Notes under the pieces: generated by a model
Database searches by the model: none
Seen by the model: the letters and a program-made list of their open reading frames with translations, nothing else
What the model was told of the DNA's origin: nothing
Program-made: the position numbers and the translations under genes
NCBI RefSeq assembly: GCF_006345805.1
Contig: NW_021831285.1
Location: 1-64,000 of the forward strand
Length of the DNA stretch: 64,000 nt
Source: Octopus sinensis
Taxonomy: Eukaryota
Direction of reading: 5' to 3'
Shown here: positions 1,185 to 44,982 of the stretch, one piece after another
How positions within the stretch are numbered: position 1 is the stretch's first letter
How the letters are laid out: every line of letters begins with the position of its first letter

Positions 1185-2273
1185 CTCAGAAGCGCACCAT
1201 GCTTTGCCAATCCCGAGAGTCTTTCCAGATTCGACCATGCCCTTAGGACTTGCCTCGAATCAATATGTAATGCACCATTCGACGATCTTGGCTGGGAACA
1301 GGCAATACTCCCTATCAGTCATGGCGGCATCGGTGTGCGCTCAGCCACTGACCTTTCTTTGCCAGCATTCCTTTCCTCCACACATGCCACGAGCACCCTT
1401 GTCCAAGAGATTCTCCAACCCTTTTCCGAATCCTCTTTGGAAACAGAGTCAGTCGCCGCAAAAAGCCGCTCGCTTGGGTTGTCTCTTGAGCTTCCTCAGA
1501 ATCCGCACGCACAGGCCGAATGGGACAGGATCCTCTGCGACCAGAAGCTAAACAAGCCCAAGCTTAACCAACATCGCTTGGCTTGCTTACTGGCTGCCTC
1601 ACAACCATATTCGGGGGCTTGGTTGACCGCTATCCCAATGGGTTCTATTGGAACCTTATTGGACGATGATTGCCTGAGGATCGGCATATCACTGCGCCTA
1701 GGACTGAACGTATGCCGGGAACACCGGTGTCGCTGTGGATCGACCGTTGACCCCTTTGGATTGCACCCGTTATCGTGCCAAAGAAGTTCCGGACGCTTCC
1801 CTCGACATACGGCTCTGAACGACATAGTCAAGCGGACCCTGGAAACTGCCGGATTCCCTTCACAGCTGGAACCGGTCGGGCTGGCTCGGGAGGATGGTAG
1901 ACGTCCTGATGGTCTAACGACTTTCCCATTTGAAAATGGCAAGTCTCTCATCTGGGACGCCACTTGTACGGATACCTTCTCCTCCGGGAACATCTTGTCG
2001 TCGGCTTAAGAGCCGGGCTCCGCAGCCAACCTGGCCGAAACGCTAAAAATCAAGAAATACAGTGCATTATCTCACCGCCACATCTTTTCCCCGATCGCAG
2101 TGGAGACATCGGGAGTCCTCGGCCCCAGAACTAAAAAATTCCTTATTAAACTGGGGGATTTGGCAAGCAGAAGAAGAAATGATCATCGGGAACGGACATG
2201 GCTTTTCCAACGCATATCAATAGCCATCTTGCGTGGGAATTGCCATTCCATCCTATCCTCTGCTGCTAATTAA
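1185..2273 (+). mobile_element. 5'-truncated CRE-clade non-LTR retrotransposon (end of RT, CCHC knuckle, restriction-like endonuclease)
   Basis: CREHRCRCG...HPLSC...RHTALNDIV, RPDG...WDATC and ETSGVLG motifs; premature TAA at 2007-2009; natural stop at 2271-2273. Confidence 0.9.
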
Positions 2274-2483
2274 ATATACATAATTATCATAAATTGATTC
2301 ACCTTATTACTAAAAATCATAAACAAATTATATTTTTATTTACTTTCGATGTAGTCTTATAGGTCATTAATGTCATGTTTTTTTCATAAAGTCATATGTT
2401 TAAATTTATAAATTAATAATTACGCACGCTTAAATATATTTGTTGTGATGGCTAAACCTAAAAAATCAAATAAAAAGAAAATA

Positions 2484-8199: not shown

Positions 8200-9110
8200 A
8201 AAAATTTAACCTTAAAAATAAGAAACAATAAAATACTTTAAAGACTATTTATTGAAAATGGACATAACATAATTTTCCAAATTTTGTGTAGCAAAGTTTC
8301 TGTTTGACCTCATAAAACTCCTAAATTGCGAAAAGCATCGTTCGATAGATGCCGAGGATGGTTGACAGTTTTGAAGTAACGAATAATCTTCCGGAGAGAT
8401 ATTTTTATTATCCATATTAATAATTTTAGTCATATCGCTCTCTAAAATTCTCTTCTCTAAATATTTTTTGATCCCTGCTTCATCCTTCCCGAAGTCAAGT
8501 GTACTTAACGTCGAATATGCAAATTCTATTGTACATTCGTTACTTTCAAGTTGTCATATTTTCTCTATGAGATTAATTACTATATGAAAAACCTGGAATA
8601 TGTGAATAGTTATGCGAAATTGCACATAAGCTTTTTACTAGTTTTTCACTTTTCAATGCATTTTTGGTGGCAGTCACTAGTATTCCTTCGTCCTCAATCA
8701 AATCAAAAATGTTAATCACTGAGATTAAATTTCTTGAATAAAAAGATGCAGCCTATAACCAGGTGCCCCATCTCGTCAACACAACTTTCGGAGGAATTCC
8801 AATTTCGTAAAACAACAATTTTCGCTTGTAGTTCTTCCTGACAGAAGCTTGCACGCTAGCTATCACATCATCAACTTCTGGATAAGATTTTCTGACCTCC
8901 ATTGAACAATTATGCAAAATATGGGTGACGCAATTAACATGAAAAAGATTGGGATATAAATTTTTTAAAATTTTCCCGGCTAAATCATCAATTAATTAAA
9001 ACAATACCGGATGTCATATACCGTGCAGCATCGGAAATGAGAAGCATAAAATTATCCCGTTCAACCATAAGGTTTCGAATGGAATCATCTACGATCTGTG
9101 CTATGATATT
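8200..9110 (-). pseudogene. Degraded hAT-superfamily (DUF659-like) transposase, second copy
   Basis: Minus strand GIPPKVVLTRWGTWL and SSASIERCFS...RSNRNF dimerisation-domain end (ORF 8245-8433). Confidence 0.7.
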
Positions 9111-10008
9111 TTTTGTTATTTTGAAAATTGTTTTGTTGTTTTGAAAATTGTTTTGTTGTTTTGAAAATTGTTTTGTTGTTTTGAAAATGTTTTGTTGTTT
9201 TGAAAATGTTTTGTTGTTTTGTTTTGAAAATTGTTTTGTTATTTTGAAAATTGTTTTGTTGTTTTGAAAATTGTTTTGTTATTTTGAAAATTGTTTTGTT
9301 GTTTTGAAAATTGTTTTGTTATTTTGAAAATTGTTTTGTTATTTTGAAAATTGTTTTGTTGTTTTGAAAATTGTTTTGTTATTTTGAAAATTGTTTTGTT
9401 GTTTTGAAAATTGTTTTGTTATTTTGAAAATTGTTTTGTTGTTTTGAAAATTTTTTTTTTTTTTTAAAATGAGAGAACAAGAATCCGAACTAATTAAGAA
9501 GATCATTGTCTCCAGAAAACCCTTTCCATTGAAGATCCAACAGGGAATGTGCACAAGTCTGAGTCGTCGCCGTTATGTTCGGAAAGGGGAGTAGAACCGA
9601 CTCCGTTACAACAGACATATGCATACATCTGAAGGAAATCCTTAGATTAGGTGATTCTGGTGGCCAACGCATCACACTAATAGAAACCAACGAGCGCAAC
9701 CGCGTGTAATTAAGAAGATCCAAACACACTAATAGAAACCAACGAGCGCAACAACGAGCGCAACCGCGTTTTGAAAATTGTTTTGTTATTTTGAAAATTG
9801 TTTTGTTATTTTGAAAATTGTTTTGTTATTTTGAAAATTGTTTTGTTGTTTTGAAAATTGTTTTTTATTTTGAAAATGTTTTGTTGTTTTGAAAATTGTT
9901 TTGTTATTTTGAAAATTGTTTTTGTTGTTTTGAAAATTGTTTTGTTATTTTGAAAATTGTTTTGTTATTTTGAAAATTGTTTTGTTGTTTTGAAAATTGT
10001 TTTGTTAT
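9110..10008. repeat. 20-bp minisatellite TTTTGAAAATTGTTTTGTT(G/A), two arrays split by an insertion
   Basis: About 17 units at 9110-9451 and about 12 at 9769-10008, read directly. Confidence 0.95.
9452..9768 (-). mobile_element. Poly(A)-tailed retro-insertion (probable LINE 3' end) inside the minisatellite
   Basis: T15 at 9451-9465; TTTTGAAAAT on both sides; ORF 9490-9729 ends shortly before the tail; internally re-copied 5' end. Confidence 0.65.
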
Positions 10009-15499: not shown

Positions 15500-16956
15500 G
15501 TAATTATCATAAACGGCTTAATTTATTTATGTCATTACCTGTTAAAAGACGACGTTCTTTGAATGAAGAAAAAAGAAAATTTAATATCAACTGGGAAAGT
15601 GAATACTTCGTAGTCGAAACAGACAACAATAGTATGCAATGCTTTTGTGTCATGAAATTGTGAAAACTATAAAACGGGACAATGCTAAACAACATTTTCA
15701 ACGACATTTAGACCACCTAGTTGTCAACTCCAAGTGTTCAAGAGAAGATTCCGTCGAAAATTTGAAATACAAATTAAGACAACAAAAAAATGTTTAAAAA
15801 CTTTTTTAAATGTGGCAAATGCAAGAGTTGAAGCATCCTTTCGAGTTGCTCATATCCTTGGATCTGCTGGAAAACCTTTTTCAGACGGCGAACTTTGAAA
15901 AGATGTATCATGGAATCAGTTAAATGCATTGATCCCGACAAGGAGCATAACTTTGAAGCAATTCCACTTTCACGTGACACAATTCAGCGCCGACAGTTTC
16001 ATATTGCCGAGCATCTTAATCTATCACTCCTACAAAAATTAAATTCTCAAACTACGTTATTTTCACTTGCCATTGATGAGTCGAATGATATATGTGATTC
16101 TGCTCAGCTGATCATATTTATTCGTACTCTATCCTTCGATTTTGAAATACATGAGAATTTTCTATCCATGAAGTCACTACCTGGAAATGTACGGGGTCAA
16201 GATATATTTGAAATAGTTAAACAATGTTGTTTGGAATTCAAATTGGACATGACATGTCTCATCATTGATTGATCTCATTGATGACAAAATAATTAATTAT
16301 GACGATCTTACACCAAATACATTTAATACTATATTCGATTATATTTTGAAACAATTTGAAGAGCGATTTAACGAATTTAAAAAATTGAACTCAAACTTTA
16401 ATTAACTGCAGCACCACATACTGTTTCGATTGAGAATGCGTTATTGGAATTCAAATTGAATTACATTGGAATTTCAATTTGAATGCGCCATTCGGAAGCA
16501 CATATTTATGTGAGTCTACATTTTTCAAAATGAAATATTTAAAAAGTCAATATAGATCTCGGATAACGGATGCAAACTTAGAGTCATGTTTGCGCATAAT
16601 GATATCTACCCTACCAGTGGATTTCAATAAGCTCGCAAAAAATACCAAAGATCCTGGCCGTCATTAGAATAACTTGTATAATACATTTCTTTTAATTAAC
16701 TTTCCTTCTTTCTTATCTTTTGTCCATGAAATAATTATTTATTTTAATAATATGATGTCCCTGATAAACGAGAGCATTTCCTGTCCAAGAACTCATTCGG
16801 TCTCGATGACAATGGGCAACTTATGCGGTCAATTTAATAATTAAAAAAAACTACTATATTAATATCGAAAAAATAATGCAGAAAATGTGCGGCCGTGGAA
16901 GAGAAGGAAAAATAAATGCTATGCGGCCGCAAACCCAAAAAGCTTGCGCACCCCTG
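15500..16956 (+). mobile_element. Degraded hAT (GTF2IRD2/SPIN-like) element
   Basis: LAIDESNDICDSAQLIIFIR; FGSTYLCESTF...RSRITDANL; right TIR ...TTGCGCACCCCTG ends at 16956. Confidence 0.85.
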
Positions 16957-18029
16957 ATCTAGGATGTAAAGAAAACTAGGAGAACTATTATACTATTGGA
17001 AAAAATTAAATAAAAACAGCTATGTTAACGAAAATAAAATTTTATTAAAAATAAACAAGTGTCCTAAGACTAATGTACATACCAACAAATATTTTCGATA
17101 TTTTATATCTTTTGAGTATTTTTTTACTTAACAATGGTTTTTTCTTTGCTACTCTTCCAACTAATCCATTCTTATTTAAGTTGCGGGTAATTGTTCGCGG
17201 GCAAATTACTCTTGAGTGATGGTTTCCATTTCTAGAGCGAGGTCTTTTGCAGATTTTTCACTATTGGCTTCAGAAAGTTCCACTAATATTTTGATTTCGT
17301 TTGTATTGAGTAATGTTGGTCCTTCAGACCCACTTTTTCTATAAATGGTTCCTGAGTTTATGTATTTTCGAACAACATCGAAAACGATCGATTTCGGAAC
17401 TCCGAGGATATCAGAAATTCTCCTATAAGAAAAATTGTGCTGGTAATAAGAAATAATTTGTCCTTTACAAAAAGAATCCATTAATTTTTTCTAAAATATT
17501 TTAAAAAATTAGCTCTTTTAACTATAATAGCAAAAGTGTCCGGAATTTTACGCCACTGAAATACGTTTTATGCTTTTAAATATCGTTTTATAAAACTTTT
17601 TTAAATATATTTTTTTTAAATATAAAAATATAGAAAAAAATATTATGCTCAAAGATTTTTTTCTAAATTTGATAATAAAAATGACGATTTATAAATTGTC
17701 CGGATTTTAATGTCGAGGGGTGTATATTAATTTCAAACTAGAAATCGATAAACGCTGTTAGCCTAAATTAAATTAGTTTTACACAAACGAATAATGAAAG
17801 TAGACGACGTAAAGTACGCCTTTGTCGCCAATCAAGTCAGAGCTGCAATCTTGCGATGACACACAGCTCAACAAAAATTTTGACACAGAAATGGAAAAGC
17901 AAAGGAAATTTGCGGCAAACTCCTCTTCCAAGGGAAGAAGTAAAATCACTGAAGATCTGGACTTATAATTAGATAATTTAGTTGACTATAGTTAATCGAC
18001 TCTAATTAAATAGTTAGAAATTACTTCCT

Positions 18030-18130
18030 GTTAATTATTTATTATTAAGAGCACTTTCGAGAAAACATAAAGTGAATTAAGTCTACCTTGTGCCGTGTTC
18101 TGTAACATTCTCTCTATTAGTTTTACCAGG
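18030..18130 (-). mobile_element. RTE-like LINE 3' tip
   Basis: Matches the 3' end, UTR and (TAA)n tail of the element ending at ~22437. Confidence 0.65.
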
Positions 18131-19820
18131 ATTTTCTGTTGTTCGTATTCTTTACCGATTTCTCCTGTTTATATCTAATCTATAAAAATTTGAAAAAGAA
18201 ATTTCGTAATCGGTGATTTGGTTTAAATCAAAAAAAGAATGTTCAATTTTACAATGAAAGAAATGAAGACATATGAATTTGATGTGTTCCTCGTGCCTCT
18301 TTTTGGCAAGAAGCTTGGAGCGAGTGAAATGCGAGGCTTAAATCATATGATGTTGTTGGAAAAAGAATTACTGATGCTGAACACATAAGGCCAGAGTTCT
18401 CGAAACAGAATCTATTAGGTTTTTGAAACCAATCGAGATTTTGTCTGGACCATGAAAATAAGTCGTTTTGTGGAATGTAAGGTATCCACTACTTCTTTTT
18501 CCGAGGAAAGGAGAGGTGCTGGGCGTATTTTCAGCCTTCTTTTTGAGGCTAATATATCGGATTTTTATACTTTTTATGTGATATTAACTGTTGTTGATCC
18601 TTGGGTTAAATAAAAAAAATAAGTATTTAATGTGCTGATATAAAACTTTATATCAAATGTCTTAAGATAATTTTTTTTGACTAAGACAGACCTTTATCAA
18701 CCACTCTCAGAATTTAATTGAAGTTTGGGTATAGCCCTTGATTTTGCCTCCAGAATTATTTTCGCAAAGTAGCTGATAACCTTGTCCAGAAAGCTGAAGT
18801 TATCCAGATAAAAATTCTTTAATTTAGATTTCTTGGAACCGTAGCTAGTTTGCAGCATTTTAATTTTATCAATTAGGAACTCATTTGGTGTTAACATCCT
18901 TTTGATCCTAACAAAAGCGGATTGTGGTCTCTTCTTGTTTTGTAAAAGACTTACCAATCAGCATTAAGTGAAAGTGATAAAGAGCAAAGTGTTAAATTCG
19001 GCGACGTAGGCCTATCCGTCACCCTGAGAGGGTCCTCGTGTTTCTCGATGAATCATTCAGTATTGTTAGACTCCATTTGAGATTGTCAAAGTTTTCTTTT
19101 TATATCCGCCGACTGAGTTAACAGCCATGAGTGGTGCTTAATAACTTTATCGATGCATGTCATTTTAAAGAAATTTGGAAAGATATAGTTCTTCAGACAG
19201 GAGGAGCCAAGGAGTTAAGTGCATAGTACTTTACAAGATTGCTTCAAGTAGGTGGAATTTGAAAACTATCAAAAGTATGGTTTGATGAAAAGTGTGCTTT
19301 TGTTTCTATACGACTCTCAATTACAGATAATTCAATTGATTAGAAAAGCAGCAAAGATACACATCCAATCATTTGTGCTGAAAAAGACTCCTGAGAGAAT
19401 GTAATTGAACAAAACCACGGAATGAAGGTATCTGGAATGTAAGGTCATTTGATTAAATTAATTCGATTTCTTACTTTTATAGACTTCCTGCTGATATTCA
19501 ATTTATAAATAACAAAACAATTGCAGTTTAATTATCTTGAATAGAATAAAAGAATGCATTAATGCTTATCGAATCTAATTAACTAGGGGTGTTTTTATTA
19601 ATTATTAAACTTTCTTTTTGAAAAAATATTTTTATTTATACATAATATTTCGGTCGCATACCCGGCATTCCGCGATTAAGACGAGCATGCAAAAATCAAC
19701 GACTATAAACCAATATTTTTGCACAAAAATGATTTTTCCTTAACTTTTGTTGAACAATAAAATTTTAATGAAAAAATTTATATACAATAAATAGTCGTTA
19801 TTGAAATATCTGTTCATGTG

Positions 19821-22094
19821 ATGGAACAATTGTCAGCAAAATTGTGGAAGGAGGAGGACGTGATACTACTCATAAACGGTGGTTGCGCATATTGACAGTC
19901 TAGATACAACTCAAAGAACTGTATTTGATAATACAGCCAAACGTCTGCTTACTACAGTGGGTGGACATGTTGAACTGTCTTGTTGTGGAATCACTTCTCA
20001 AGAACACAAACTAATCGACATGCTCGGCACTCGCAATGACAGTCGAGGTACAGTCTCTGTGGATTCTGACACGTGGGGTGACATAATGAGTCACATTGAG
20101 TGGAGGAAAGGAATGTTTTTGATGGAGAGTGGAGTGGTGAACATAACCACAGTGATAACTCTACATCGGACAATTAGTCACAAAGTATAATTCCTAGTCT
20201 ACTCCAGTCAGTGGCCACGTCCTCTCCGAAAGTGACATTGTTGAGAATGTCTGAAATTGAGGTGATGGAAGGCTTGATCAGGAAGGAGGAGTGTATGTTG
20301 GGCGATGTAGGGAGGGCTATTCGTCACTTGCAGGTGACTGTCGAGTTGAGAAAAGTGTGGAGGGTATCATTAAAATTATATTCTAGACTCTTTTTGGGAA
20401 TATTCTTATGAGAAATGTCCGCTGCTTTTCGGGAAAGTGGTCATGGACAGTTCTTTTGCGAGATAACCAAATCATCCATTCCCCTTCTCTCGACAGAACT
20501 CGGTACTACTCTTATCGACACATCGTCCTTCCAGAAAGGAGACACACTCCTCATTGTCTCTTCCCATTTTCTAGTGAATCTTTTCTTCAAATCGACGTAT
20601 GGTCTCTTTTTTACTCCCAGACATATTTGTTGGTTTACCCTACCGGAGAACAAGTCCCATACTCAGCACACACTCTTTTTTTGGGAGGGAAGGGGATCGA
20701 GTCCCCCCATTGTCGAATATATTGTGAAGAGGGACTGATGGTGGAGTCATTCGGGTAGTTTTGTCTGGGCACATTAGTTATATCACTATTAATAAGAGGC
20801 CTATTTCCTCCCCCACTCCTCTTCGCCGTGGGGATGTCCTTTCTATTGCTGATCAGCATTTTTTCTGTGTGGATGAGCCCCTCAGTTATGCTGATATGCT
20901 TGAATACCTCCCGATTCCTCTCCAGTCACTTCCTGAATATTTTACTCGCCTATTATTAAGACTTTCCTCGTTTTCCAAATGTATTCCACCACCCTATGTC
21001 GGTTGGACTCCCGGACAGTCCATTCCTCTTGGATTGATACCCCAATTGTGTCAGAAGGTGTTTGGGACATGCTTAATTTTCGCCGATTGTCTGTACGAGA
21101 GGGACAGTCTCTCTGCACAGGTCATTGGCCATTGTGGAATGTCTTTGGGTCACTGCCACATCTCAATTAAACGGGACGACCATACTTTCGACCGGTGGGA
21201 CAACTACCTCGGCAATATTTTTACAGTAACACTCCTCTTTTATCTCAGCTTAAATCGGTCAAGTGGGAGTCTCCTTTCTATGGAGAAAACGTGACACTTG
21301 ATGTGGGAATAATCCATTCGACTTACTTCCATTCTTTGATGTGCCCGCTGTTTCAAAAATGGGGAAATATTGTTGAATTTAGCATTCCTCGAGTATTATT
21401 TTTGGGGATATTTTAGTACTCTTTTCCCCAACAAGCATTCTTGGGTTTCTTCCTTCAATTGAATGGAGGGAGAAGTCTTCCCCACGAATGTTTAACTTTA
21501 CAATCTGTGATTGACCTAGTCCAACAGGACAAACAATATCAGGTTGACCTATCCCCTTATTTGTAGATAAGACAAGCAGAAACCCCCCAGAACTCCCCAC
21601 TCCACACATTCTCTTCTACTCTCATCAACCGTCTTGGTTCATTCTGCAAAAGTATTACTTCCTCATTCCAACCAACAACTCCGAGTCAGCCGGTAGAACA
21701 ACCCAGTCCCCCTACTGTTGCTCCTATTGTCCCTCCTTCTCCTGAAGAGAGTGAAGAGGACGCTTTGGGAGGGTTGGATGAATTGGGAGATGTATGGTCA
21801 GATCAGGGAGAGGAGGGGGAGTGTACATCTTTGCCTTGGTGGTTGACGAGTGGTCGATATGTCCAACTGAAGAATGGGGGATTGCGTGGAATTGTTCGAT
21901 ATGTGGGGAGGACACATGAGGGGGATCAATGTCGGGTGGGAATTGAGTTGGAGAGTGAGAAGGGGGATACCGACGGGGTGGTCGATGGAATTGTTTACTT
22001 TCATTGCCCACCCAATCACGGATTGTTTGTATACCCTGAGAATATTGAGTTGAGCACGAATGTGGGGGTCACCTTCCATGATTTGTTGCATTAA
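19821..22094 (+). CDS. KIF13/Khc-73-like kinesin-3 family protein with degenerate motor, FHA, KIF13-type stalk and CAP-Gly; 9 exons, ~694 aa
   Basis: Eight GT-AG introns (25,23,23,24,23,23,24,24 nt) give a 2085-nt in-frame CDS. FHA: LFLGGKGIESPHC...LRRGDVLSIADQHFF. Stalk: FGTCLIFADCLY...GHCHISIKR. CAP-Gly: GIVRYVG...GIEL...GDTDGVVDGIVYFHCPPNHGLFV. Start codon uncertain. Confidence 0.8.
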
Positions 22095-22436
22095 ATTATT
22101 TAAAAAATTGTTTTATCTCTTTGCAGACTGTATATATTAGTCAATCCTTCATATTTGGATAAACAGACTATAAACATCGGTTTTAGAGGCTTTATGCTTT
22201 TGTTGAACAGCCCAAATTTTTTGGGAAACAAGTATAATTTTACATTAAATTTAAATGTTGAGTTAATACAGTAATCTTTATACAGTAATAAAAAATTCCC
22301 ATAATCATCTCTATTCACCCATATAGAAAGAAAATCTTCCATAGAATTGCTATAAATAGCTTTTAAAACTTTTATTGTAAAGTGGTTTCACTATTTTAAA
22401 TAGTTTTGGATAAATAATTGATAAAAAAATTGCTAG

Positions 22437-25333
22437 TTAATAATTATTATTATTATAAAGCACTTTCGGAAAAGTCATAAGTTAATTAAGCTTTCCTTGT
22501 GCCACCATTGAAATTCTCCCGGTCATGCGTCTCCAGGCTCTCCGGTCAGTTGCGATCGTCCTGAGTGAGTCGAGATCATCGCCATTTTTCAGTTTTTTAT
22601 TAATTCCAGCTAGATCTTCATTTAGCGTGGTAGCCAGAGTGACCCTGGGTCTTCCACGGAAGTCTCCTTTGGAATGGGCAAAGTAGTTTTCCATCGCGAT
22701 ATTCGGCGGAGTGAGGCTGTCAAGTCTTAATATGTGTCCAAAGAGTCGCCATCTGGACTCCAGGATGTCCATAGAGATCGGTCTCGAATTGCATCTTTTG
22801 TATAGGGTGGAATTTGCTATTTTCCTTGAGAATTGCATGTTTATCACTCTTCTCAGTTGGTTCCGATGAAATCGGTCCAAATTGTTCATATCGGTCTTAC
22901 TGATTCCCCACGTCGATCCATTGTACATTAGGACTGGGACAACAAATGTGTTGTATATTTTAAGTTTTGTCTTTGAATTTAGCTTCTTTAGGCGCCAGAT
23001 GTTCATAAACTTATTGTATGTGGCAATTGATAGTATTTTTCTGTGCATAATGTCTTCAGAGTCCCCTAAGAGAGATCCGACTTTTTTTTGTCTTCTCCAG
23101 GGCTCATCATGAGTTCGTTCAGATCGAATAAATTTCGTATGTTCAGTTTTATTGTGGTTGATTGTTAGAAACCATTTGGAAAAAATATCTGGTAATGTTT
23201 CGATAATAAATCGAAGGGTTTCAGCATCATCAGATACGAAGTCGACATCATCAGCATATATTATTTCGTTGTATTTAGTGTTGTCCACAAGAGGCCGAAA
23301 GTCTCTGAGTGCTGCCTCTAGGTAGACGATAAAGAGAACTGGGGACAGCGAATCGCCTTGTGGTATGCCCCGTGATGTGTAGAAATAGTTTGACACATTT
23401 TTACCAAGTTTGGTTGCTAATTGAGTGTTCTGAAGAAGCATTAGGATTATTCTGATGTCGTCATGATTTAAGAAGGTCATAAGTATTTCCACAAGTTTAG
23501 TTCTGTGAACAGAGTCGAATGCTCTGGACATATCGATGCCGAGTATTTCAGTGCAATGTTTATATTTTTGGCATGTGGCAGCTGTCCATCTGTGAGTCCA
23601 GATCACATCAGCAGTGGACCTGCCAGTTCTAAAGCCACTTTGTCCCGGTGACAGAAAGTTTTCCACCTTGGTTCTTATCCTCTCTAATGCGATCAACGAC
23701 AGTGTTTTCCGAAGCGTCGTTAGCAAAATAATAGGTCTTAGGCTGGATAGGGGTCCTTTTTGTTTTCCAGGTTTCTGTAGAGGAATTAACCATCCTTTGC
23801 CGAGGTCTAATGGGTTGTTCTGCTCAAATGCCTTGTTCAGGATATTTGCAGCGATTTCAGCAAACTTCATTGGCGCATATTTTACTAGTTCAGGTGGGAT
23901 ATTGTCCGGTCCCCCAGACCTGCCGGTTTTCAGTTTCTTCATTGCCTCCAATATTTCGTAAGTGGTTAATGGGGAACTTAGTGCCCCTACAGTATATGGG
24001 TAGGGTTTGTATCCTGATTCATTCTCCCAGTTAAGCATTTTGTAGTAGTATTCAGATATAGCCTCTACCTTACTCTTGTTGTCAATGATAGCCGCTTCCG
24101 TGGTGTCCCAGACAGTGATCGAATTTTGCCTCTTTTTTTTGCTTAGCAGCCTCATTGCCATGAACATTTTCGTGTCGTCCTTTTGTTTTGTTATGTGTTG
24201 AAATTGCTCTTCTGTTTCTTTGTACATTAGCAATTTCTGTGTTTTCTTGATATTTAGTAATATCATGTTCCGTAATTTTCGGAGTTCTCTTATTTTTTTC
24301 GGGTTGCTGGAGTTTTGTATTTTTAACCTCAAGGTTTTCTGCCTTTCTGAGAGGGAGCAAATCTCGTTATCGTGAAATTTGTGTTTTTTTCGAGTGAGTC
24401 CAACAACATTTACAGCTGTCTTCTTCATTGCACTGGTCACTGCATCCCAAATCGCATTTGCAGGTTTTGTTGTGTCAATATTGTCGAGTTCTTCCTGTAG
24501 TTTGTCTGCATAGTTCTGTTTGAGTTTTTCATCACGGAATAATTCAAGATTATAGCTTTCTTGTTCATCATGCGTAAGTTTTTTCAGTTTGTTGTATGTC
24601 TTGTACAGTCCGATGCTAGTGATTATTAGTTTGTGGTCACTATTTGTCTCCAGTCCCCCGTATGAACGTGAATCCACAAGTAGAATTGTAGATTGCCATT
24701 TGAGGATGTCATCGCCTACATATACTTATGGAGTTACGATAGGCATACCTTCAAATGGCTTCATCACGAATACAATTGGGGTGAACATACATATGTCGAT
24801 TGGGCTATGTTTTTACGTGAAGTCTGTGTGGACGCACTTGTTAAAAGATCTGACGGCAAAATTGGTATTATTAATGTTATTTCAGGTGGTCCTGGTATGA
24901 TTGTGGAGGTAGACGAGAGTATGTTTTCCAAACGGAAAAACAACTCTGGAAGAGTTTTACCAAAACAGTGGGTCTTCGGTGGTATTTGTCGAGCCACCAA
25001 ACAGTGTTTTCTGCAACCAGTCGCGGATAGGAGCAGAGAAACACTGCTCAGTCTAGTAATTCGATATGTCGAGGTGGGAAGCATTATTTATAGTGACTGC
25101 TGGAAATTTAATAACCATTTAAATTATTGATAGAGGGTTATAAATTAAATAATCTATTTTTCACTAAAAAAATTAATTAATTTTAATTATCTTCTAAAAA
25201 AACTGCGACCACTTCGACAAAAGTACCGTAGATGTTTATGGGCAGCTTTGCAGAGGATGTAGTCCATTTGATTGAATATAGGTATGTAATTTCCATTTGA
25301 GTCCTTTCTGGTTCCAGTCCATGTTGTTAATAA
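22437..25333 (-). mobile_element. RTE-like LINE (partial APE endonuclease + RT), endonuclease split by a Merlin fragment
   Basis: Open 731-aa ORF 22482-24677 with SDH, QGDSLSP and YADD; (TAA)n tail; upstream piece TWTG...NQMDYILC at 25233-25333. Confidence 0.95.
24685..25227 (+). mobile_element. Merlin (IS1595-like) transposase fragment with right end
   Basis: IVEVDES.FSKRK...GR...QWVFGG...RSRETL...SDCW; right end ...TTCGACAAAAGTACC; GTAGA on both flanks. Confidence 0.85.
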
Positions 25334-26488: not shown

Positions 26489-26619
26489 CGCTAATTAATA
26501 ATTGATTTTTTTATGAAAAAAAAATTATAATAAATTGAAATATTCTGCCCTTTTAGAAGAGTTTTGCAATTTTTTTTCATTAATAATTTTTTGTTCAAAT
26601 TACTATTAAAGAATCTGTT

Positions 26620-28232
26620 ATTTAGTATTTAATTAACAGCAGAGGATAAGATTGAATGGCAATTCCCACGCAAGATGGCTATTGATATGCGTTGGAAAAG
26701 CGATATGCGTTTTGTATTTCTTGATTTTTAGCGTTTCGGCCAGGCTAGCTGCGGAGCCCGGCTCTGCGGCTGACGTAAAGATGTTTTCTGCGGAGAAGGT
26801 GTCCGTGCAAGTTGCGTCCCAGATGAGCGACTTGCCATTTTCGAAAGAGAAAGTCGTTAGGCCGTCAGGACGTTTACCATCCTCCCGAACCAGGCCGACC
26901 GGTTCCAACTGTGTTGGGAATCCGGCAGTTTCAAGGGTCCGCTTAACTATGTCGTTCAGGGCAGTGTGTCGGGGAAAGCGTCCGGAGCTTCTCTGGCACG
27001 ATAATGGGTGCAATCCAAATGGGTCAACGGTCGATCCTCAGCGGTACCGGTGTTCTCTGCATACGTTTAGTCCCAGGCGCAATGAGACGCCGATCCTCAG
27101 GCAATCGTCGTTCAATAAGTTTCCAATAGATCCCATTGGGATGGCGGTCAACAAAGCCCCCGAATATGGTTGCGAGGCAGCCAATAAACAGGGCAAGCGA
27201 TGTTGGTTAAGCTTAGGTTTGATGAGGTTGTTCGACTTCTGATCACAGAGAATCCTGTCTCATTCGTCCTGTGCGTGTGTATTCTGCGGAAGCTCAAGAG
27301 ACAACCCAAGCCAGCGACTTTCTGTGGCGACTGACTCTGAGTCCATAGAAGATTTGGTAACGGGTTGGAGAATCTCATGGACAAGGGTGCTCGTGGCATG
27401 TGTAGAAGAAAGAAATGCTAGCAAAGAAAGGTCAGTGGTTGAGCGCACACCGATGCTGTCGCGACTGATGGGGAGCGTTGGCTGTTCCCAGCCAAGATCG
27501 TCAAAGGGGGCATTACATATTGATTCGAAGCAAGTCCTGAGAGCATGGTCTAATCTGGAGAGGCTCTCGGGACTGGCAAACCATGGAGCCCTTCTAAGTG
27601 TAAACAATAGTTTGGGAATGGCGAAACAGTTCCTCAATAGAAACAGGGCCGAACGGGAGTCGATGATACCAAGATTACGGGACATTGACACAAGGTTTGA
27701 TGTCTTTTCTGACAATGTCGAAACGACATCGGTGTTAAAAATCGGGGAACCCAAAATCTTGAGATTGCTGGGCGAGGTGACATGGATGTTGGGAAGTAAT
27801 GACTCTATAGAACCATGGACAACGGAGAAACGGTGGGCATCATAACTGATGTTAAAGATTGGGGGATTGATTTCGAGGTTAGGGTTGCGTGTAATGCAGG
27901 GATTAAAACTCTCAGGTCGGCAAGAACGGATTCGAGAGTACCTCCGATAGTGGCATCGTCCAAATACCACGCATTGAAAAGGGAGGATACACTTCTGGCA
28001 ACTGGATCAATTGCCAGGGCAAAGAGAAGAGGACCCAGAGGGTCGCCTTGTTGGAAACCGTTGCAGGACGAGATTGAATGATCGCCAGCGATAAGGAGGC
28101 TGGGGCGACCGTAGGACAAAGCGACCAGGCGGGCAATAAAAGGTGAACTCCGGATAATAGATTCAAATATTACGTCCCGACGAACGCTGTTAAAGGCGTT
28201 AATCAGGTCCAGTTTGACTAGAAGGCAAGGGT
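26620..28232 (-). mobile_element. 5'-truncated CRE retrotransposon, same subfamily as 1185-2273
   Basis: RT motifs QQGDPLGP and WYLDD, CCHC, RPDG; frameshifts, stops and an internal deletion at ~26700. Confidence 0.9.
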
Positions 28233-28433
28233 TACAAAATTATGAAAAAAATCGAAATCTTTTACCGTTAGAATAGATGATTCGTTAATTTTAAACAAAA
28301 ACACACAAACATGAAATATCAAAATTACTTTAAATAGAAAAAAATCCTCACATTTACATCTTCCGTGATAATCTATAACTTCCACTAATTGTTGATTTGT
28401 TAAAAAAATAGAACAAAAATATTTAAAAAATTA

Positions 28434-30760: not shown

Positions 30761-32036
30761 ATTCGATTATTTATTGTCTGACTAACTTTGATATATGATT
30801 AATAGCCCAGATAAAAGTCGCATTATTGTTAAAAAAACATAAATTTGAACATTTAATAACAAAGAGCTTTATAGTACAAATTACAGATAAAACTTAATTT
30901 CGTCCAAATTTTGTATTAAAATATGCCAATTAGGAAAATTGTAGTACCTTTAAGGAGATCCCACCTGGGCAAAACAAAATTTTATATTCCTTAGGTTTGA
31001 GTTTTGAGTTTAAATTGTCACAATTTGCTGAGTTTGTAAAAGAATTTGTGACCGAGAAAGGCATGAATGAATTGTTAGGCGTCGCAAACTAAATTTTATT
31101 GTCTTTTTACGGTTACGGTCATCGATTTAACGACATATGTGAGGAATACATTGCATTTTTGATAATAATCACAAGTACTATTAATTAGGTACTTTTTTAA
31201 ATAAATACTAGTCAGTACTGGCATTTCAAAATACATCTCGAACTCAATTAGACTGCAATGTGATTCATCTAAAGCACCTAATGTAAAATCTAAAAAAACA
31301 AATAGATTGTGCTCAGATTAGATATTTTTTGTATTTAAAATAACTAAACGCGAAGTACAGGCTGTGTAGATAGAAATCATATAACAGAGAAAAAATCAAA
31401 CAATCAATGTTTTAAACTGTAAAAATCAATTTTTAATTAGTTTTTAAGTCGGCTAGCCAATTTAAAGGTTTGTAATTGATTGAGTCAGCTGGAATTGACA
31501 AGTTTTATTTATCTATAATTAGATTTTATTTATGTTTAGGTAAAAGAAATAAAAGCAAAACAATTTCAAAAAGCAAATAATGATTCCATAGTACATATTG
31601 AAATCTCGGTCATGTGAGTCTAAAGATATCAAAGACCTAAAATTTCCTTGTTACGAACAATTCGGGATGTAAATCCTTGGAAGTAAAATCCTCAGGAAAG
31701 AGTTTTAAAAAGTTTTTTCTTTTTATCTTGTTTTTTTGATGAACACGATTATTATTTTTTGACAATATACTTGGTAATTACATGCTGTGAATGGATAAGC
31801 GCTTTGATCTAGTTGAGAATGCCGGAGTTCTAGAATTTTTTGTGTCAAAATTATAATAAAAATAGGTAAATTGAAAGTTATAAGAAACTTTACATATTGA
31901 ACGTTATTTAGAAAAAAACAGTAACAAATAGCAGTACTAGAATCCAATTCATCTGTCTACATTTGACTGATAAAAAACAAATAAAAATGACATTCAGACA
32001 ACTTTATTTGATAAGTAAAGATTAATATGTATCATT

Positions 32037-34395
32037 GTTTCCCCTCACTATTGCTTGGGACACGTTCTGGAGGAGCCATCTCGTCTCCAGAGGATTGTGT
32101 GTTTTCAAGGTCTTGAGACGTGCAATACTCTTGAGAAAGCACAACGACTCGTTCCCAATCGATCCCAGGGTTTCGACAGCAACCGGCTAGAAAACGTAAC
32201 GATCGGTGAGCCCATCATATTTCTTCTTCTTGATGTCCTCTGCTTTATCCGCAGCTGTGCCAGCATTGCAGGCACTTTCCAACATGTTTGTCTTGGACAA
32301 GGAGTCGGAACATGTTGAATCCCATACGAGAGGCTTTCCTTCCAAAAACGGAAAGATAGTCATCCCGTCTGGGCGTTTTCCATCTCCTCGGTCCAATCCA
32401 GGTGGTTCCAGCACTGATGGGAATCCGATTGAATCGAGAGCTCTTCTTATAACGTCGTTGAGAGCTGAATGCCTCGGGAATCTACCAGCGCTTTTTCGAC
32501 AGGAAAGAGGGTGGTGTCCAACAAACTTTGAGACCGATACGTAGACAGATACCAACTCGCAGTGTGTCAGAATCCAAGAGAGTCCCCAAGCTTCCGATTG
32601 GGAAGGCTTCCAACCATTCTCCACTCCCCGTGGACCTCCCGGCAAGCAAGCATGCTCTACGGTGTTGATTCGATGTCTTTAGGAGACTCTCGAACCGACC
32701 TTCGCACACAATCTTGTCATAACTCTTCTGTAAGGAGAAGTCCGGCGGCAGCTTCGATTCGTTTGCGCTCCAACTGTCAAAGTAGGCAGTCATCTTAGGT
32801 ATTGAAGATTCGGGGAGGAGATGGAGAATCTTCTGAACCAGAGTTTGACTGCTGTACAGTGAAGACAGGAATGCAGGGCGGGACACATCGGTAGGATTTC
32901 GGATGCCAAGACCTCCAAAGGAGACAGGAAGGGAAGCTTGTTTCCAGCCTTGATCGTCGAATTTGATGTTTATGATGCGTTCAGTTGTTTTCCGGAAAAG
33001 GACGTTAATAGAATGAAGTTGATCATTTTCTAAGAAGCAGAGTGACCCTCGTAGCACATGATTTAATTTTTGGATGCCAAGGGAATTTTTGAGCAGGAAG
33101 AAGGCTGTATGTGGGTCCAACAAATTAAGACGAACAAAAGTCTTTTCCAGTAGCATTTCCTTAGTTTCAAGAGCATCCTTGATTCCACCATCTGTCAATG
33201 GGCAGCCTAATATCTCCACACTGATACTAGGCGTGATGGACGCTCCGGGAATTATCTCACTGAAAGAAGAAACAATAACCTCGAATTCATCACGACGGAA
33301 CCCAAAATTAATGATTTCACTTTTTGAAGTGTTCAGTATGAGACCAACGCATTCAAGTCTTGGAATTAGGTCAACGAGCGCCTTGAAGACAGTTTCGGGA
33401 TGACCTCCGAGGGTGCAGTCATCAAGGTACCAAACATTCAGCGGGGTTGAACAGCTCTTAGCAATGTGATTAATTCCAAGGCAAAAGAGAACAGGGCCCA
33501 ATGGGTCTCCTTGTTGAACCCCCGAGGATGAGGAAATATGGTAAGGGCCATGGACGAGGGTGGATGGTTTCGCGTATGAGCTGAGTACATAGTTGTATAT
33601 TTCGGGACAAAATTCAAGACAGTTCTTCAATATAGAGTCGCGGCGAATGGTGTTAGATGTGCAATTTAACAATAATATGGGGGGTATTGTTGTTTATGTG
33701 GTTGAATGTACGGATTCCGTGTATTGCAGCTTCACAACCTCCTAGGTTACCAACTCCAAGTTGAATAGGGCACATTAGCGGGGTTAATGTTGGGATAACA
33801 GCCCTGCATGCCATCTTTGAAGCTAGCCGACGGAAGACAGATCCAACTGCAATGGGTCGAACACCCCCTCCTTTCTTTTCTAGCGCGATCAGTTTTGCAG
33901 AGAAGAAAAAGTGACGGACTAGCTCTGGAAGATCTCCCGAAAGCATTCTGTTGATAAGAGAACAGATCGACGAAAGAAGCCGTGATCCCGAGTTTCCAGT
34001 GTCCGGCGAGATTAGGTCCTTAAGATGTCCTGGTCGCAGCCCGTCTAGACCCGCCCCGCTGCTTGGAGCGAAGGATAAAATTCCGGCTTTAATGTCGTCG
34101 TCCGAGACAGACAATGGCTGAAGAATCCCTGAGAGAGCTAGATTTCGTGAGTCGCTTGGAGCGGCCGGATGTCGAGCTTCATGAATCTCAATTGAAGGCT
34201 TAAGGAATGGACTATCACTGGAGAGCACTCTCAAAGCCGAGCGTATTCCCCCTTCTAATAATTTAGAATGAATAGTCCTCCGTAAGAGAACGTGTCCCAA
34301 GCAATAGTGAGGGGAAACAGGATCGCCATCAGTTCTTCTTCTTATTGTCCTTAACAATTTCTTTCGTTTCAAAATATTACCTTCTATTTAAAAAA
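32037..34395 (-). mobile_element. CRE retrotransposon with large 5' inversion
   Basis: 13-bp TSD AATATGTATCATT at 32024-32036 and 34396-34408; RT/RLE on minus strand; true C-terminus, UTR and A-tail on plus strand at 34287-34395. Confidence 0.9.
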
Positions 34396-37944: not shown

Positions 37945-38110
37945 TCAAATACATTCATTCAACTTTGCATCGAGCATCGGAAATAGTAGTTTTTGTACGT
38001 TTTTTGCTGCCGGTAAGTCTTCACAATTTCTTAGAATAGAATCTATTTTTAAAGTATATTTTTTTCGTGAATATTTTTTCTGAAATATCGATGAAAATCT
38101 AATCTGCTTG
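37945..38110 (-). pseudogene. pogo/Tigger N-terminal fragment
   Basis: KLLFPMLDAKLNECI resembles the CENP-B HTH start. Confidence 0.45.
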
Positions 38111-38159
38111 ATAAAAAAGAGATGGCCGACAAAATTGCTACTTACTTCGAGTACCTCTT

Positions 38160-39300
38160 CAGAACTGACGATGAACACATATTTCAGTTTGTTGAAGATC
38201 CTAGAAGTTTAACTGTTCTAAATACCATCACTGAGATACAAACTGCTCTGCGGTAATTAAAGAATAATAGGAGTCCGGGTACTGATGGTATGAATGGAGA
38301 ACTTTTAAAATACTCACCAAACTCACTCGCTCATCAGTTATACGCTGATCTGGAAGTGTGGGTTGGCTCGGAGCACTCTCGTAAATTCAAAAAACACATT
38401 GGCACTTCACAAGGTGACTCCTTATCTCCGATCTTATTCTTCATCTATCTGGGAGCTCTTCTTCGTGATCTGAGAGCTAAAATTTGCCCAACCAGTATCA
38501 TAGAATTAATATATGCGGACGACATAGAATTTGTTTTAGAAGAAATGAATGATATCAGAATTGCACTTGACTACGCTCCTGAAGTATCTGGAAAGTGGTT
38601 TTTGAAAATGAACGAACAAAAGACTGAGTTCATTGCAGTTAAACGAGAAAGTAAAGTTACTGACGAGATATGGAGGGGATCAAGAAAAATCGGGCCACTG
38701 CTTGGTGATTGGGAAGATGTCCAACGAAGAAAGATACTGTTACCACTGAAGAGGCTTAAATCGATATGGCTAAGCTACACCCATCTCACAAATCCCGTAA
38801 AAGTACGTTTGTAAAATGCTTTCATCCTGCCCATTTTACTATACAACTCAGGAACATGGGGGACTGAACCAGAAATTTGTAGAAAATCTCGATGCTTTTC
38901 ACAGAAAACAACTCAGATCATTATTGAAAATACACTATCCAGTGAAGATCAAGAACCAAGACTTATACTCCGTTTTCAGAACAGAACAATTCGATGCAAT
39001 TATCACTAAGAGCCGATGGGGACTCTTCGGCCACATACTACGGATGGATTCCTCAGTTCCTCCCAATGACATCATGGAAACATACTTTTAATGCTCTGGG
39101 ATTTCTCGAGGCAGGCCAAGGACAACACTACCACTAATCTTAAATAACGACCTTAAACATGTCGGATTGCTACTAGAAAATACAGACGATCTAGACAGCC
39201 TCCAAAAAATCGCAATCTCAAGAAAAGCGTAGAGGTGTTTAACAGACAAAATCTTATGGGTTTGATGTTCCTGGAGCGATAGCCCGATTCGGAAACGAAA
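38160..39300 (+). mobile_element. Internally deleted RTE-like LINE
   Basis: SPGTDGMNGELLKY joined directly to GTSQGDSLSP, IYADD, SRWGLFGHILRM and GRPRTTL. Confidence 0.85.
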
Positions 39301-39500: not shown

Positions 39501-39707
39501 CCTCACATGACTGATAATTTCATTCCCAATTTATCATTTTTTCAATTCTTTAGTACATAATTTATGCTTGTATTTTATAATAAGAATTTACTTAATATTA
39601 TAAAAATCAGAAACTATATATTAAAAAATATAATTATTTGTATTATATATAATTGTATTTTATTATCCAATTCTTGTGGTAAATGAGCAATATTTGATTC
39701 TTGGCCA

Positions 39708-44190: not shown

Positions 44191-44352
44191 TTCTTAAATT
44201 TATTAGTCGTATTTTTACTGTAACGGTCTACCAGGTTTTTATTGCAAATAAACAGTGGTGAACTGATTATCCCACACGATTGAGAGCCTTCCTTAAAATA
44301 ATAATCGCTTGTAAGTGTTCAGTATATTTGCGAATGAAAAAAGTTCAAAAAA

Positions 44353-44377
44353 GGAAGTAAAAAATAAAACGGAAGTA
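44353..44377 (+). promoter_or_regulatory. Two ETS-consensus sites upstream of the ETS gene
   Basis: AGGAAGT at 44353-44359 and CGGAAGT at 44371-44377, about 60-85 bp before the ATG. Confidence 0.4.
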
Positions 44378-44436
44378 CCTAACGCTAGAACGTTTAAAAC
44401 CAGGTATCTGTAATACGCAACAATTCAGAATCAGAA

Positions 44437-44982
44437 ATGGGTGTAAAACGAATAATACTTTGGAAATTTATTATCAACCTTTTAAAAACTGAAAACAAAG
44501 CAATTGAATGGAAAAATAAATCTATGGGAATATTTGTGATCACCGATGGAGATTTGCTGGCATATTGGTGGGGACAATGTAAACAAAACCCTTCCATGAA
44601 CGAACAAAAACTTTTGAGGGCTCTCAGAACATACTACAAATATCCAAAAATTCTTAAAAAAGTACCTCATTCGAGAAATACCTACATGTTCCTAAATCAA
44701 AAAACAGAACAAATCCGAACACATAAGTCACCGGAGCAGACTAAAGAGATAACCATCCCCAATATATCGTATCCCCAATACACTATTCAGAAAGACAAAA
44801 TCCAGCCACAAATCTGTCAGTCTTATGTGCCATTTGAGGATTCGTACTACTCATATTATCAACCGAATATGTATTTTCCGAATCATTATACTTCATATGG
44901 CTACAATTATACAGAATACTCAAATTGGTTCGTTCAGTGTTCAAAGGAATTAGATGATATTCTGTTTCCCCTCGAAAACTAA
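44437..44982 (+). CDS. ETS-domain transcription factor, intronless and divergent
   Basis: LWKFIINLL...IEW...GIF...WWG..K.NP.MN..KL.RALR.YY...KV; Tyr/Gln/Pro-rich C-terminus. Confidence 0.9.
   Translation: MGVKRIILWKFIINLLKTENKAIEWKNKSMGIFVITDGDLLAYWWGQCKQNPSMNEQKLLRALRTYYKYPKILKKVPHSRNTYMFLNQKTEQIRTHKSPEQTKEITIPNISYPQYTIQKDKIQPQICQSYVPFEDSYYSYYQPNMYFPNHYTSYGYNYTEYSNWFVQCSKELDDILFPLEN

What the first reader, a model, noticed from the sequence alone, without database searches (positions are those of the whole stretch)
19821..22094. Apparently motor-dead, miniaturised KIF13/Khc-73-like protein
Seen: an intact spliced ORF with FHA, KIF13-type stalk and CAP-Gly. The ~230-aa N-terminus aligns by eye to a kinesin motor skeleton (TQRTVFD...MLGT; KVTLLRMSEIE; WTVLLRD). 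The P-loop GQTGSGKS reads GITSQEHK, switch I SSRSH is absent, switch II DLAGSE reads RMSEIE, and roughly 70 aa appear deleted. Established: these motifs are required for ATP hydrolysis. Inference: a retained pseudo-kinesin acting as a static microtubule or cargo tether through CAP-Gly, or as a regulator of an active paralogue.
Basis: partly seen in the sequence, partly recalled or inferred. Interest (0 to 1): 0.7.

Follow-up and report, generated by a model that had tools for sequence, protein, structure and literature searches.

The report
Motor-less KIF13B-like gene of a dicyemid
A tiny-intron parasite gene sitting in a mollusc genome assembly encodes a 702-residue protein that keeps the FHA and CAP-Gly modules of the transport motor KIF13B, has no recognisable kinesin motor, and is still maintained by selection.

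Summary
The ORF is real. Eight exons (19821-22094, + strand) joined by seven GT-AG introns of 23-25 nt give 702 codons, far beyond shuffled controls. [quoted passage not shown] An FHA domain is real but generic (BLASTP E=2e-6 to the KIF13B FHA; Ki-67 FHA scores equally). The claimed kinesin 'skeleton' in residues 1-240 is not statistically supported. The 'KIF13-type stalk' is not detectable either. No P-loop, switch I or switch II exists, and no motor exon lies within 94 kb examined. The CAP-Gly ligand groove is also altered (GKNDG reads GDTDG; F to E, W to R), which weakens the microtubule-tether idea. Two haplotigs differ by 6 synonymous and 1 non-synonymous change (pN/pS about 0.05), so the gene is under constraint. 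The contig belongs to a dicyemid-type parasite co-assembled with an octopus-like host. No kinesin-3 motor was found in the parasite contigs. Best reading: a selected, motor-less KIF13B descendant acting as an adaptor.

The parts
19821..22094 (+). Whole gene: 8 exons (19821-19878, 19904-20184, 20208-20363, 20387-20754, 20778-21225, 21249-21392, 21417-21542, 21567-22094), 702 codons plus TAA stop
   Evidence: A second, 99.8% identical haplotig copy lies at G000:C9311:39934-42121.
19879..19903 (+). Intron 1 (25 nt, GTG...TAG). The other introns are 20185-20207, 20364-20386, 20755-20777, 21226-21248 (or 21263-21285), 21393-21416 and 21543-21566, all 23-24 nt GT-AG
   Evidence: Introns this short are reported in animals only for dicyemids and myxobolids (PMC13644364).
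19821..20611 (+). N-terminal region aa 1-240 with no assignable domain; candidate decayed motor core
   Evidence: No Pfam hit. Smith-Waterman score equals shuffles. Kinesin HMM gives 0.1 bits. GC is 43.9%, like the rest of the CDS and unlike the flanks at 31% and 24%. No paralogue elsewhere in G000.
19878..20145 (+). aa 20-100: the only block that aligns to kinesin (alpha1-beta3-P-loop-alpha2-beta4 of KIF13B 73-153). It includes GITSQEHK (19987-20010) at the P-loop position
   Evidence: hhalign score 16.6-16.8, P=0.09-0.16, probability below 1%. Not significant.
20624..20880 (+). FHA domain, aa about 245-322 (spans intron 4)
   Evidence: Pfam PF00498 E=0.009, 16.9 bits, below the 20.7-bit cut-off. 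BLASTP E=2e-6 against KIF13B FHA 3fm8. z=9.3. A PDB search of this region hits only FHA domains. A Ki-67 fragment scores as well as KIF13B.
20881..21743 (+). Middle region aa 323-586, mostly helical in the low-confidence model. No recognisable KIF13 stalk domain. It contains 'SPFYGE' (aa 444-449), which weakly resembles the kinesin-3 'DPFYDE' motif
   Evidence: No Pfam family at E<=1. Smith-Waterman not robustly above shuffles.
21744..21854 (+). Acidic linker plus 'LPWWLTSG' motif just before the CAP-Gly domain, matching KIF13B 'VPEWLREG'
   Evidence: A KIF13B-family HMM aligns 587-691 at 43 bits, E=5e-16. The PDB 2cow alignment starts at aa 610.
21855..22043 (+). CAP-Gly domain aa 624-686. 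The groove motif GKNDG reads GDTDG (21963-21977)
   Evidence: Pfam PF01302 E=1.4e-18. Residue-by-residue alignment to KIF13B.

Best explanation
The gene belongs to a dicyemid-type parasite whose contigs were co-assembled with its mollusc (octopus-like) host. It is most likely the descendant of the parasite's KIF13B/Khc-73 gene. It has lost the kinesin catalytic machinery and nearly all of the stalk but keeps two protein-interaction modules in their ancestral order: an FHA domain and a C-terminal CAP-Gly domain. It cannot bind or hydrolyse ATP as a kinesin does and cannot walk. It is kept by purifying selection. It most plausibly acts as a non-motor adaptor or scaffold, with the FHA binding one partner and the divergent CAP-Gly binding another. 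That second partner is probably not the canonical EEY/F tail of tubulin or EB proteins. The 240-residue N-terminus is old coding sequence and may be the decayed motor core, but that is not demonstrable.

Shown: gene structure, CAP-Gly, FHA, absence of motor motifs, constraint.

Inferred: KIF13B ancestry, organism, adaptor function.
For: Gene model and its excess over chance.

CAP-Gly: E=1e-18. KIF13B is the best PDB match at 44.6 bits, against 35.6 or less for CLIP, dynactin and others, and the alignment extends into the KIF13B-specific pre-domain motif.

FHA. A KIF13B-family HMM finds exactly two hits, collinear, FHA then CAP-Gly.

No kinesin signal: Pfam, PDB, 1.84 billion representatives (0 hits), own HMM with filters off, and six-frame ORFs of 94 kb (the window, 20 kb more of the contig and the 10 kb haplotig).

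Constraint: 6 synonymous and 1 non-synonymous difference between haplotigs; pN/pS 0.048; P=0.0007, or 0.007 under a transitions-only model.

CAP-Gly groove substitutions are specific to this protein. The neighbouring CAP-Gly gene keeps F, W and GKHDG.

Organism: 23-25 nt introns. The host has molluscan haemocyanin arrays of 7 functional units. The window also carries ETS, NitFhit and MYST genes with the same tiny introns.
Against: KIF13B ancestry rests mainly on the domain pair, its order and the CAP-Gly affinity. The FHA is no closer to KIF13B than to Ki-67. None of PF16183, PF12423 or PF12473 is detectable. No orthologue from another species could be found to bridge the gap. All allelic differences lie at codon 178 or later, so constraint on the N-terminus itself is untested. 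There are no expression data. The structure prediction was uninformative (mean pLDDT 36.7). The parasite genome in this assembly may be incomplete, so 'no kinesin-3 paralogue' is provisional.
Confidence: 0.6

Rival explanations
1. One reading: the N-terminus still adopts a (shrunken) kinesin fold. The protein is then a pseudo-kinesin that statically tethers microtubules or cargo through the dead head and the CAP-Gly, or regulates an active KIF13 paralogue.
For: It keeps the G, T and K of the Walker A motif and the following M-x-G-T. The helix/strand order of the low-confidence model (E14-16, H24-38, E42-45, H51-59, H74-83) fits alpha1-beta3-alpha2. The N-terminus has coding-type composition.
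Against: The alignment is not significant (P 0.09-0.16), and the HMM and Smith-Waterman scores equal shuffles. The second half (switch II, alpha4, alpha5, the microtubule-binding face) is not recovered. About 240 residues cannot hold a 330-350 residue motor plus neck. The CAP-Gly groove residues are replaced. No active kinesin-3 was found on parasite contigs.
Confidence: 0.15
2. The gene is not kinesin-derived at the 5' end, or not at all. Either a KIF13B tail fragment (FHA to CAP-Gly) was fused to an unrelated older coding sequence, or an FHA and a CAP-Gly domain were combined independently by domain shuffling.
For: There is no statistical kinesin signal in aa 1-240 and no KIF13 stalk signal in aa 323-586. 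The FHA similarity is generic.
Against: To my knowledge the FHA-then-C-terminal-CAP-Gly combination is known only from KIF13B/Khc-73 (established knowledge; not tested here by an architecture search). The CAP-Gly is closest to KIF13B, including the flanking motif. The N-terminus has no paralogue or donor anywhere in the 2.7 Gb assembly. The best, though weak, kinesin alignment falls at the expected place.
Confidence: 0.2
3. A decaying pseudogene, or an artefact of a permissive splice model.
For: Dicyemid genomes are reduced and fast-evolving. A flexible splice search can build spurious paths of 200-400 codons in shuffled sequence.
Against: The frame stays open for 702 codons only when seven canonical 23-25 nt introns are removed: 642 against at most 219 in shuffles. 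It is intact in both haplotigs, with 6 synonymous and 1 non-synonymous difference. CDS GC is 44-49% against 24-31% in the flanks.
Confidence: 0.04

Closest known systems
KIF13B (GAKIN) / Drosophila Khc-73, kinesin-3 family
   Same: An FHA domain followed, at the extreme C-terminus, by a CAP-Gly domain preceded by an acidic linker and a 'P-x-W-L..G' motif. The CAP-Gly is the best match among solved structures.
   Different: 702 vs 1826 aa. There is no detectable motor (PF00225), Kinesin_assoc, KIF1B or DUF3694 domain, all of which are present in every KIF13B listed. The P-loop and both switches are absent. The CAP-Gly groove reads GDTDG instead of GKNDG. KIF13B's CAP-Gly binds tyrosinated alpha-tubulin tails (bioRxiv 10.1101/2022.08.09.503328).
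KIF26A / KIF26B / C. elegans VAB-8 (kinesin-11), 'unconventional' kinesins thought to lack ATPase activity
   Same: Members of a motor family retained for non-motor, signalling or scaffold roles (PMC13228590).
   Different: Those proteins keep a clearly recognisable kinesin motor domain. Here no motor domain is recognisable by any sequence method. They are also a different kinesin family with no FHA or CAP-Gly.
Non-canonical CAP-Gly domains (e.g. those of CYLD)
   Same: The CAP-Gly fold is kept while the canonical GKNDG tubulin-tail motif is not. Such domains bind other partners (CYLD CAP-Gly2 binds the Listeria protein InlC, PMC13623971 abstract; other partners from established knowledge).
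   Different: CYLD is a deubiquitinase and is only distantly related in sequence (E=0.002-0.6).

Membership tests
Kinesin superfamily | Motor domain matching Pfam PF00225 above 29.3 bits | tested here: not met
   No hit at E<=10 for the whole protein or for aa 1-238. My own kinesin HMM with --max gives 0.1 bits, with 66 of 1000 shuffles equal or better. No hit on C7756 or C9311 in the genome scan.
Kinesin superfamily | P-loop GQTxxGKS/T, switch I SSRSH, switch II DLAGSE | tested here: not met
   Direct reading of the 702-aa translation. At the only alignable place the P-loop reads GITSQEHK. The parasite's other kinesins keep all three motifs.
Kinesin superfamily | Kinesin fold (three-layer alpha/beta core) | tested here: inconclusive
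   Single-sequence AlphaFold2 gave mean pLDDT 36.7 and pTM 0.23, too poor for a fold search. No homologues were available for an alignment.
Kinesin-3 / KIF13B | FHA domain downstream of the motor | tested here: met
   FHA at aa about 245-322. The subfamily is not resolved: a Ki-67 fragment scores 61 and the equivalent KIF13B fragment 55.
Kinesin-3 / KIF13B | Kinesin_assoc (PF16183), KIF1B (PF12423) and DUF3694 (PF12473) stalk domains | tested here: not met
   No hits in the protein. In the genome these families hit only host chromosomes.
Kinesin-3 / KIF13B | C-terminal CAP-Gly domain with the KIF13B-type flanking motif | tested here: met
CAP-Gly domain (PF01302) | Profile match above 26.5 bits | tested here: met
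   67 bits, E=1.4e-18.
CAP-Gly domain (PF01302) | GKNDG motif and aromatic groove residues that bind EEY/F tails | tested here: not met
   GDTDG; F to E and W to R relative to KIF13B (alignment). Role of the motif: PMC3806363. Actual binding is not testable here.
FHA domain (PF00498) | Profile match above 20.7 bits | tested here: inconclusive
   16.9 bits, E=0.009. Pairwise E=2e-6 and z=9.3, and all three PDB hits are FHA domains.

The most novel reading that the evidence does not exclude
A kinesin-3 gene has been stripped of both of its microtubule-binding activities, the ATPase head and the canonical CAP-Gly groove, yet is kept under strong purifying selection in an animal that has no nervous system and apparently no other kinesin-3. 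That would be a former motor fully repurposed as a non-cytoskeletal adaptor.
Probability: 0.3. Interest if true: 0.55.

Novelty: new variant of a known kind. Interest (0 to 1): 0.4.

Why it matters
Catalytically dead kinesins are known (KIF26/VAB-8), but they keep an obvious motor domain. Here a KIF13B-type gene seems to have gone further: the head has decayed beyond recognition, the stalk is shortened by about 60%, and the second microtubule-binding site is altered. Allelic data nevertheless show constraint. If confirmed, this would be a natural experiment on which parts of KIF13B have motor-independent functions. It would also illustrate how extreme genome reduction in dicyemids remodels the cytoskeletal toolkit. 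Practically, it shows that this mollusc assembly contains substantial parasite sequence that should not be annotated as host.

Tried and rejected
- **Orthologue searches.** The whole protein and the exon-8 ORF against 5.8 billion proteins, and aa 1-611 against 1.84 billion representatives, found nothing usable. No dN/dS between species and no profile could therefore be built.
- **Structure prediction.** Single-sequence AlphaFold2 of the full protein was too poor for a fold search. I did not run a second prediction with kinesins forced into the alignment, because that would be circular.
- **Last homologue search.** It returned only amniote KIF13B, so the family HMM is narrow. It still found the FHA and CAP-Gly hits, collinear.
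- **Stalk similarity.** Comparison to human KIF13B and to host KIF13 exons was not robust. One register reached z=3.4, but a different register appeared with a different target.
- **Host gene labels.** I first mislabelled the host kinesin-3 genes. Exon sequences show that C4 (125.7-126.05 Mb) is host KIF13 and C25 (7.47-7.61 Mb) is host KIF1A.
- **A second degenerate kinesin.** My crude model of the C12433 kinesin suggested a degenerate P-loop. Frame inspection showed an intact GQSGTGKT, so that was a mis-splice and the idea was dropped.
- **Myxozoan origin.** The other animal group with introns under 30 nt was rejected because the host is a mollusc with 7-unit haemocyanin genes.
- **Further host and parasite DNA.** Exact host KIF13 exon boundaries and the remaining small-contig kinesins (C9587, C11450, C9729, C6303, C1794, C4007, C4017) were not examined.
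- **Probe sequences.** KIF13B was then verified against PDB chains and database entries. The KIF1A probe was used only to rank genomic hits.

Full report
**Gene structure.** Three-frame translation of 19700-22200 shows coding segments that change frame at short GT...AG stretches. Joining eight exons gives a 2109-nt CDS of 702 codons plus stop. The exons are 19821-19878, 19904-20184, 20208-20363, 20387-20754, 20778-21225, 21249-21392, 21417-21542 and 21567-22094. The seven introns are 25, 23, 23, 23, 23, 24 and 24 nt long and all are GT-AG. Five introns shift the frame, and the two 24-nt introns end in an in-frame TAG, so every one must be spliced.

An unbiased dynamic-programming search for the longest spliced open path recovers the same model. 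With introns limited to 23-25 nt it scores 642 codons, against a mean of 118 and a maximum of 219 in 40 shuffles. The chance of 702 open codons at this composition is about 1e-17. Intron 5 has two equally scoring positions, 21226-21248 or 21263-21285, which change 12 residues.

**Whose gene it is.**
- The window is contig C7756 (188 kb) of a 2.72 Gb assembly.
- Large contigs carry long-intron genes. Many small contigs carry genes with introns of about 23 nt.
- The large contigs carry tandem molluscan haemocyanin genes with seven functional units each. The host is therefore a mollusc, most likely an octopod; the step from mollusc to octopod is inference.
- Among animals, introns under 30 nt are reported only for myxobolid myxozoans, which are fish parasites, and for the dicyemid Dicyema japonicum (PMC13644364). 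D. japonicum also has an AT-rich, LINE-rich, gene-sparse genome (PMC6736024).
- The window has the same character. It holds several reverse-transcriptase elements plus ETS, MYST-acetyltransferase and Nit-Fhit fusion genes with tiny introns.
- I conclude by inference that this is a dicyemid contig co-assembled with its cephalopod host.

**What is recognisable in the protein.**
- *CAP-Gly.* It is unambiguous: aa 624-686, 67 bits, E=1.4e-18. Among solved structures the best match is the KIF13B CAP-Gly (2cow, 44.6 bits). The next, CLIP-115, has 35.6 bits. The alignment extends upstream into 'LPWWLTSGRYV' against 'VPEWLREGEFV'.
- *FHA.* It is present at about aa 245-322. The Pfam score is below threshold (16.9 bits, E=0.009). 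BLASTP to the KIF13B FHA (sequence taken from PDB 3fm8) gives E=2e-6 with 30% identity over 84 residues. Smith-Waterman z-scores are 9.3 (KIF13B), 8.7 (KIF13A), 6.3 (KIF1B) and 5.1 (KIF1A). A PDB search with this region hits only FHA domains.
- *FHA subtype.* It is not resolved. A Ki-67 fragment scores 61 and the equivalent KIF13B fragment 55.
- *Domain order.* An HMM of nine amniote KIF13B proteins finds exactly two collinear hits: FHA, and linker plus CAP-Gly (43 bits, E=5e-16).
- *Ancestry.* To my knowledge this domain pair in this order is known only from KIF13B/Khc-73. This is established knowledge and was not tested here. I put KIF13B ancestry at about 0.75.

**What is not recognisable.** For aa 1-240:
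- Pfam finds nothing, and PDB finds nothing.
- phmmer of aa 1-611 against 1.84 billion representatives returns zero hits.
- Smith-Waterman against the KIF13B motor (sequence from PDB 7d8v) scores 35, against a shuffle mean of 33.
- A kinesin HMM built from KIF13B, two host kinesins and nine of the parasite's own kinesins, run with all filters off, gives 0.1 bits. Of 1000 shuffles, 66 scored as well or better. A highly divergent kinesin of the same organism (C12433) scores 83.9 bits with the same HMM.
It has only P=0.09-0.16 and probability below 1%.
- The second half does not align to switch II, alpha4 or alpha5.

The middle region, aa 323-611, has no Pfam family and no robust similarity to human KIF13B or to host KIF13 exons. 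The structure prediction was uninformative (pLDDT 36.7).

Weak leads in favour of a motor relic:
- The one alignment falls in the expected place.
- The predicted secondary-structure order fits alpha1-beta3-alpha2.
- The N-terminus has coding-type GC, 43.9% against 31% and 24% in the flanks.
- It has no donor or paralogue anywhere in the assembly.

Taken together, these make a relic somewhat more likely than not, given KIF13B ancestry. They do not establish it.

**No motor elsewhere.** Six-frame ORFs of the whole 64-kb window, 20 kb more of the contig and the 10-kb haplotig contain no kinesin-like ORF at E<=10 with filters off. The genome-wide PF00225 scan has no hit on C7756 or C9311. Given 23-nt introns, a distant upstream motor exon is implausible.

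On the other tiny-intron contigs I modelled kinesins of types 2, 4, 5, 6, 13 and 14, with intact P-loop and switch motifs where the models are reliable. None has an FHA or a kinesin-3 neck. A KIF1A probe reaches at most 50% identity on these contigs, against 57-93% on host kinesin-3 exons. The families PF16183, PF12423 and PF12473 hit only host chromosomes. An active KIF13 paralogue in the parasite is therefore not in evidence, although the parasite genome may be incompletely assembled.

**Selection.** A second copy on C9311 is 99.83% identical over 6.4 kb, including intergenic DNA, so it is a haplotig. In the CDS the two differ at seven sites: six synonymous and one non-synonymous (S410P). 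This gives pN/pS of 0.048, with P=0.0007, or 0.007 if only transitions are allowed. The gene is therefore under purifying selection. All differences lie at codon 178 or later, so the N-terminus itself is not tested.

**The CAP-Gly groove.** In the ungapped alignment to KIF13B, the structural glycines and the 'YF.C' motif are kept. The groove residues are not: F to E, W to R, and GKNDG to GDTDG. GKNDG is the near-invariant tubulin-binding motif, and its Asn hydrogen-bonds the EE[Y/F] terminus (PMC3806363). KIF13B's CAP-Gly gives the motor its preference for tyrosinated microtubules. A second CAP-Gly gene on the same contig (C7756, about 96.6 kb) keeps F, W and GKHDG, so the change is specific to this protein. 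Canonical tubulin-tail binding is therefore doubtful, by inference.

**Conclusion.** The protein is a selected, miniaturised, motor-less FHA/CAP-Gly protein, most likely descended from KIF13B. 'Motor-dead' is correct in the strong sense that no motor can be recognised at all. The retained kinesin skeleton, the KIF13-type stalk, the CAP-Gly microtubule tether and the regulation of a paralogue are not supported by the tests possible here. The closest functional analogues are the ATPase-dead KIF26/VAB-8 kinesins, which, unlike this protein, keep an obvious motor domain. I rate it a new variant of a known kind, of moderate interest.

Noticed in passing
whole window (G000:C7756) and many small contigs of G000: The assembly is a mixture. 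Chromosome-scale contigs are molluscan (7-unit haemocyanin gene arrays on C5 and C28). Many small contigs, including this window, carry genes with 23-25 nt introns typical of dicyemid parasites. Host annotation would be contaminated by parasite genes.
   Followed up: partly
window 22445-25325: A LINE-type element (747-aa reverse-transcriptase ORF on the minus strand, 22482-24725), 350 nt downstream of the gene, is absent from the otherwise 99.8% identical haplotig C9311. This is an insertion polymorphism and suggests recent retrotransposition.
   Followed up: partly
window 16026-22444 vs G000:C9311: Ten of the eleven differences between the two haplotigs fall inside the 2.3-kb gene and only one in 4.1 kb of flanks (P about 2e-4). 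Eight of nine substitutions are C/T changes on the coding strand (P about 0.02). This is unexplained. Transcription-associated mutation would be one reading.
   Followed up: partly
G000:C7756 about 96.6 kb, minus strand (locus L062 6625-6786): A second CAP-Gly gene on the same contig has a canonical groove (NFAKGQWCG...GKHDG). It was used as an internal control. Its family (CLIP, TBCB or dynactin type) was not determined.
   Followed up: partly
window 54977-56450 (-), 39687-41797 (+), 43665-44979 (+): Neighbouring tiny-intron genes appear to be a Nit-Fhit fusion (nitrilase plus HIT 'HVHLIP'), a PHD plus MYST-type histone acetyltransferase, and an ETS-domain factor. They were identified by eye from crude spliced models only.
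   Followed up: no
window 1318-2391, 26534-28430, 32019-34387, 38095-38811, 45680-46837, 49331-52736, 58936-60388: Much of the window is retroelement (reverse-transcriptase) and hAT-like transposase sequence on both strands. This is consistent with the repeat-rich, gene-sparse dicyemid genome described in PMC6736024.
   Followed up: no
G000:C12601:241158-242025 vs C12601:98793-99658, C9323, C9748: A kinesin-4-like gene of the parasite occurs in several near-identical copies. The copy at C12601:241 kb has multiple in-frame stops and a broken P-loop region, so it is a likely pseudogene copy.
   Followed up: no
G000:C10:72178936-72179916 and C2:90381903-90382883: The host has two intronless kinesin-2 (KIF3-like) genes with full open frames of 709 and 766 aa. 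They may be retrogenes.
   Followed up: no
window 47920-48828 (-) and 8576-9278 (-): There are tandemly repeated ORF-like units ('VHFNQNAENFFLIFFGG...' and 'QNNFQNNKTIFKITKQFSK...'). These are probably satellite or low-complexity repeats rather than genes.
   Followed up: no
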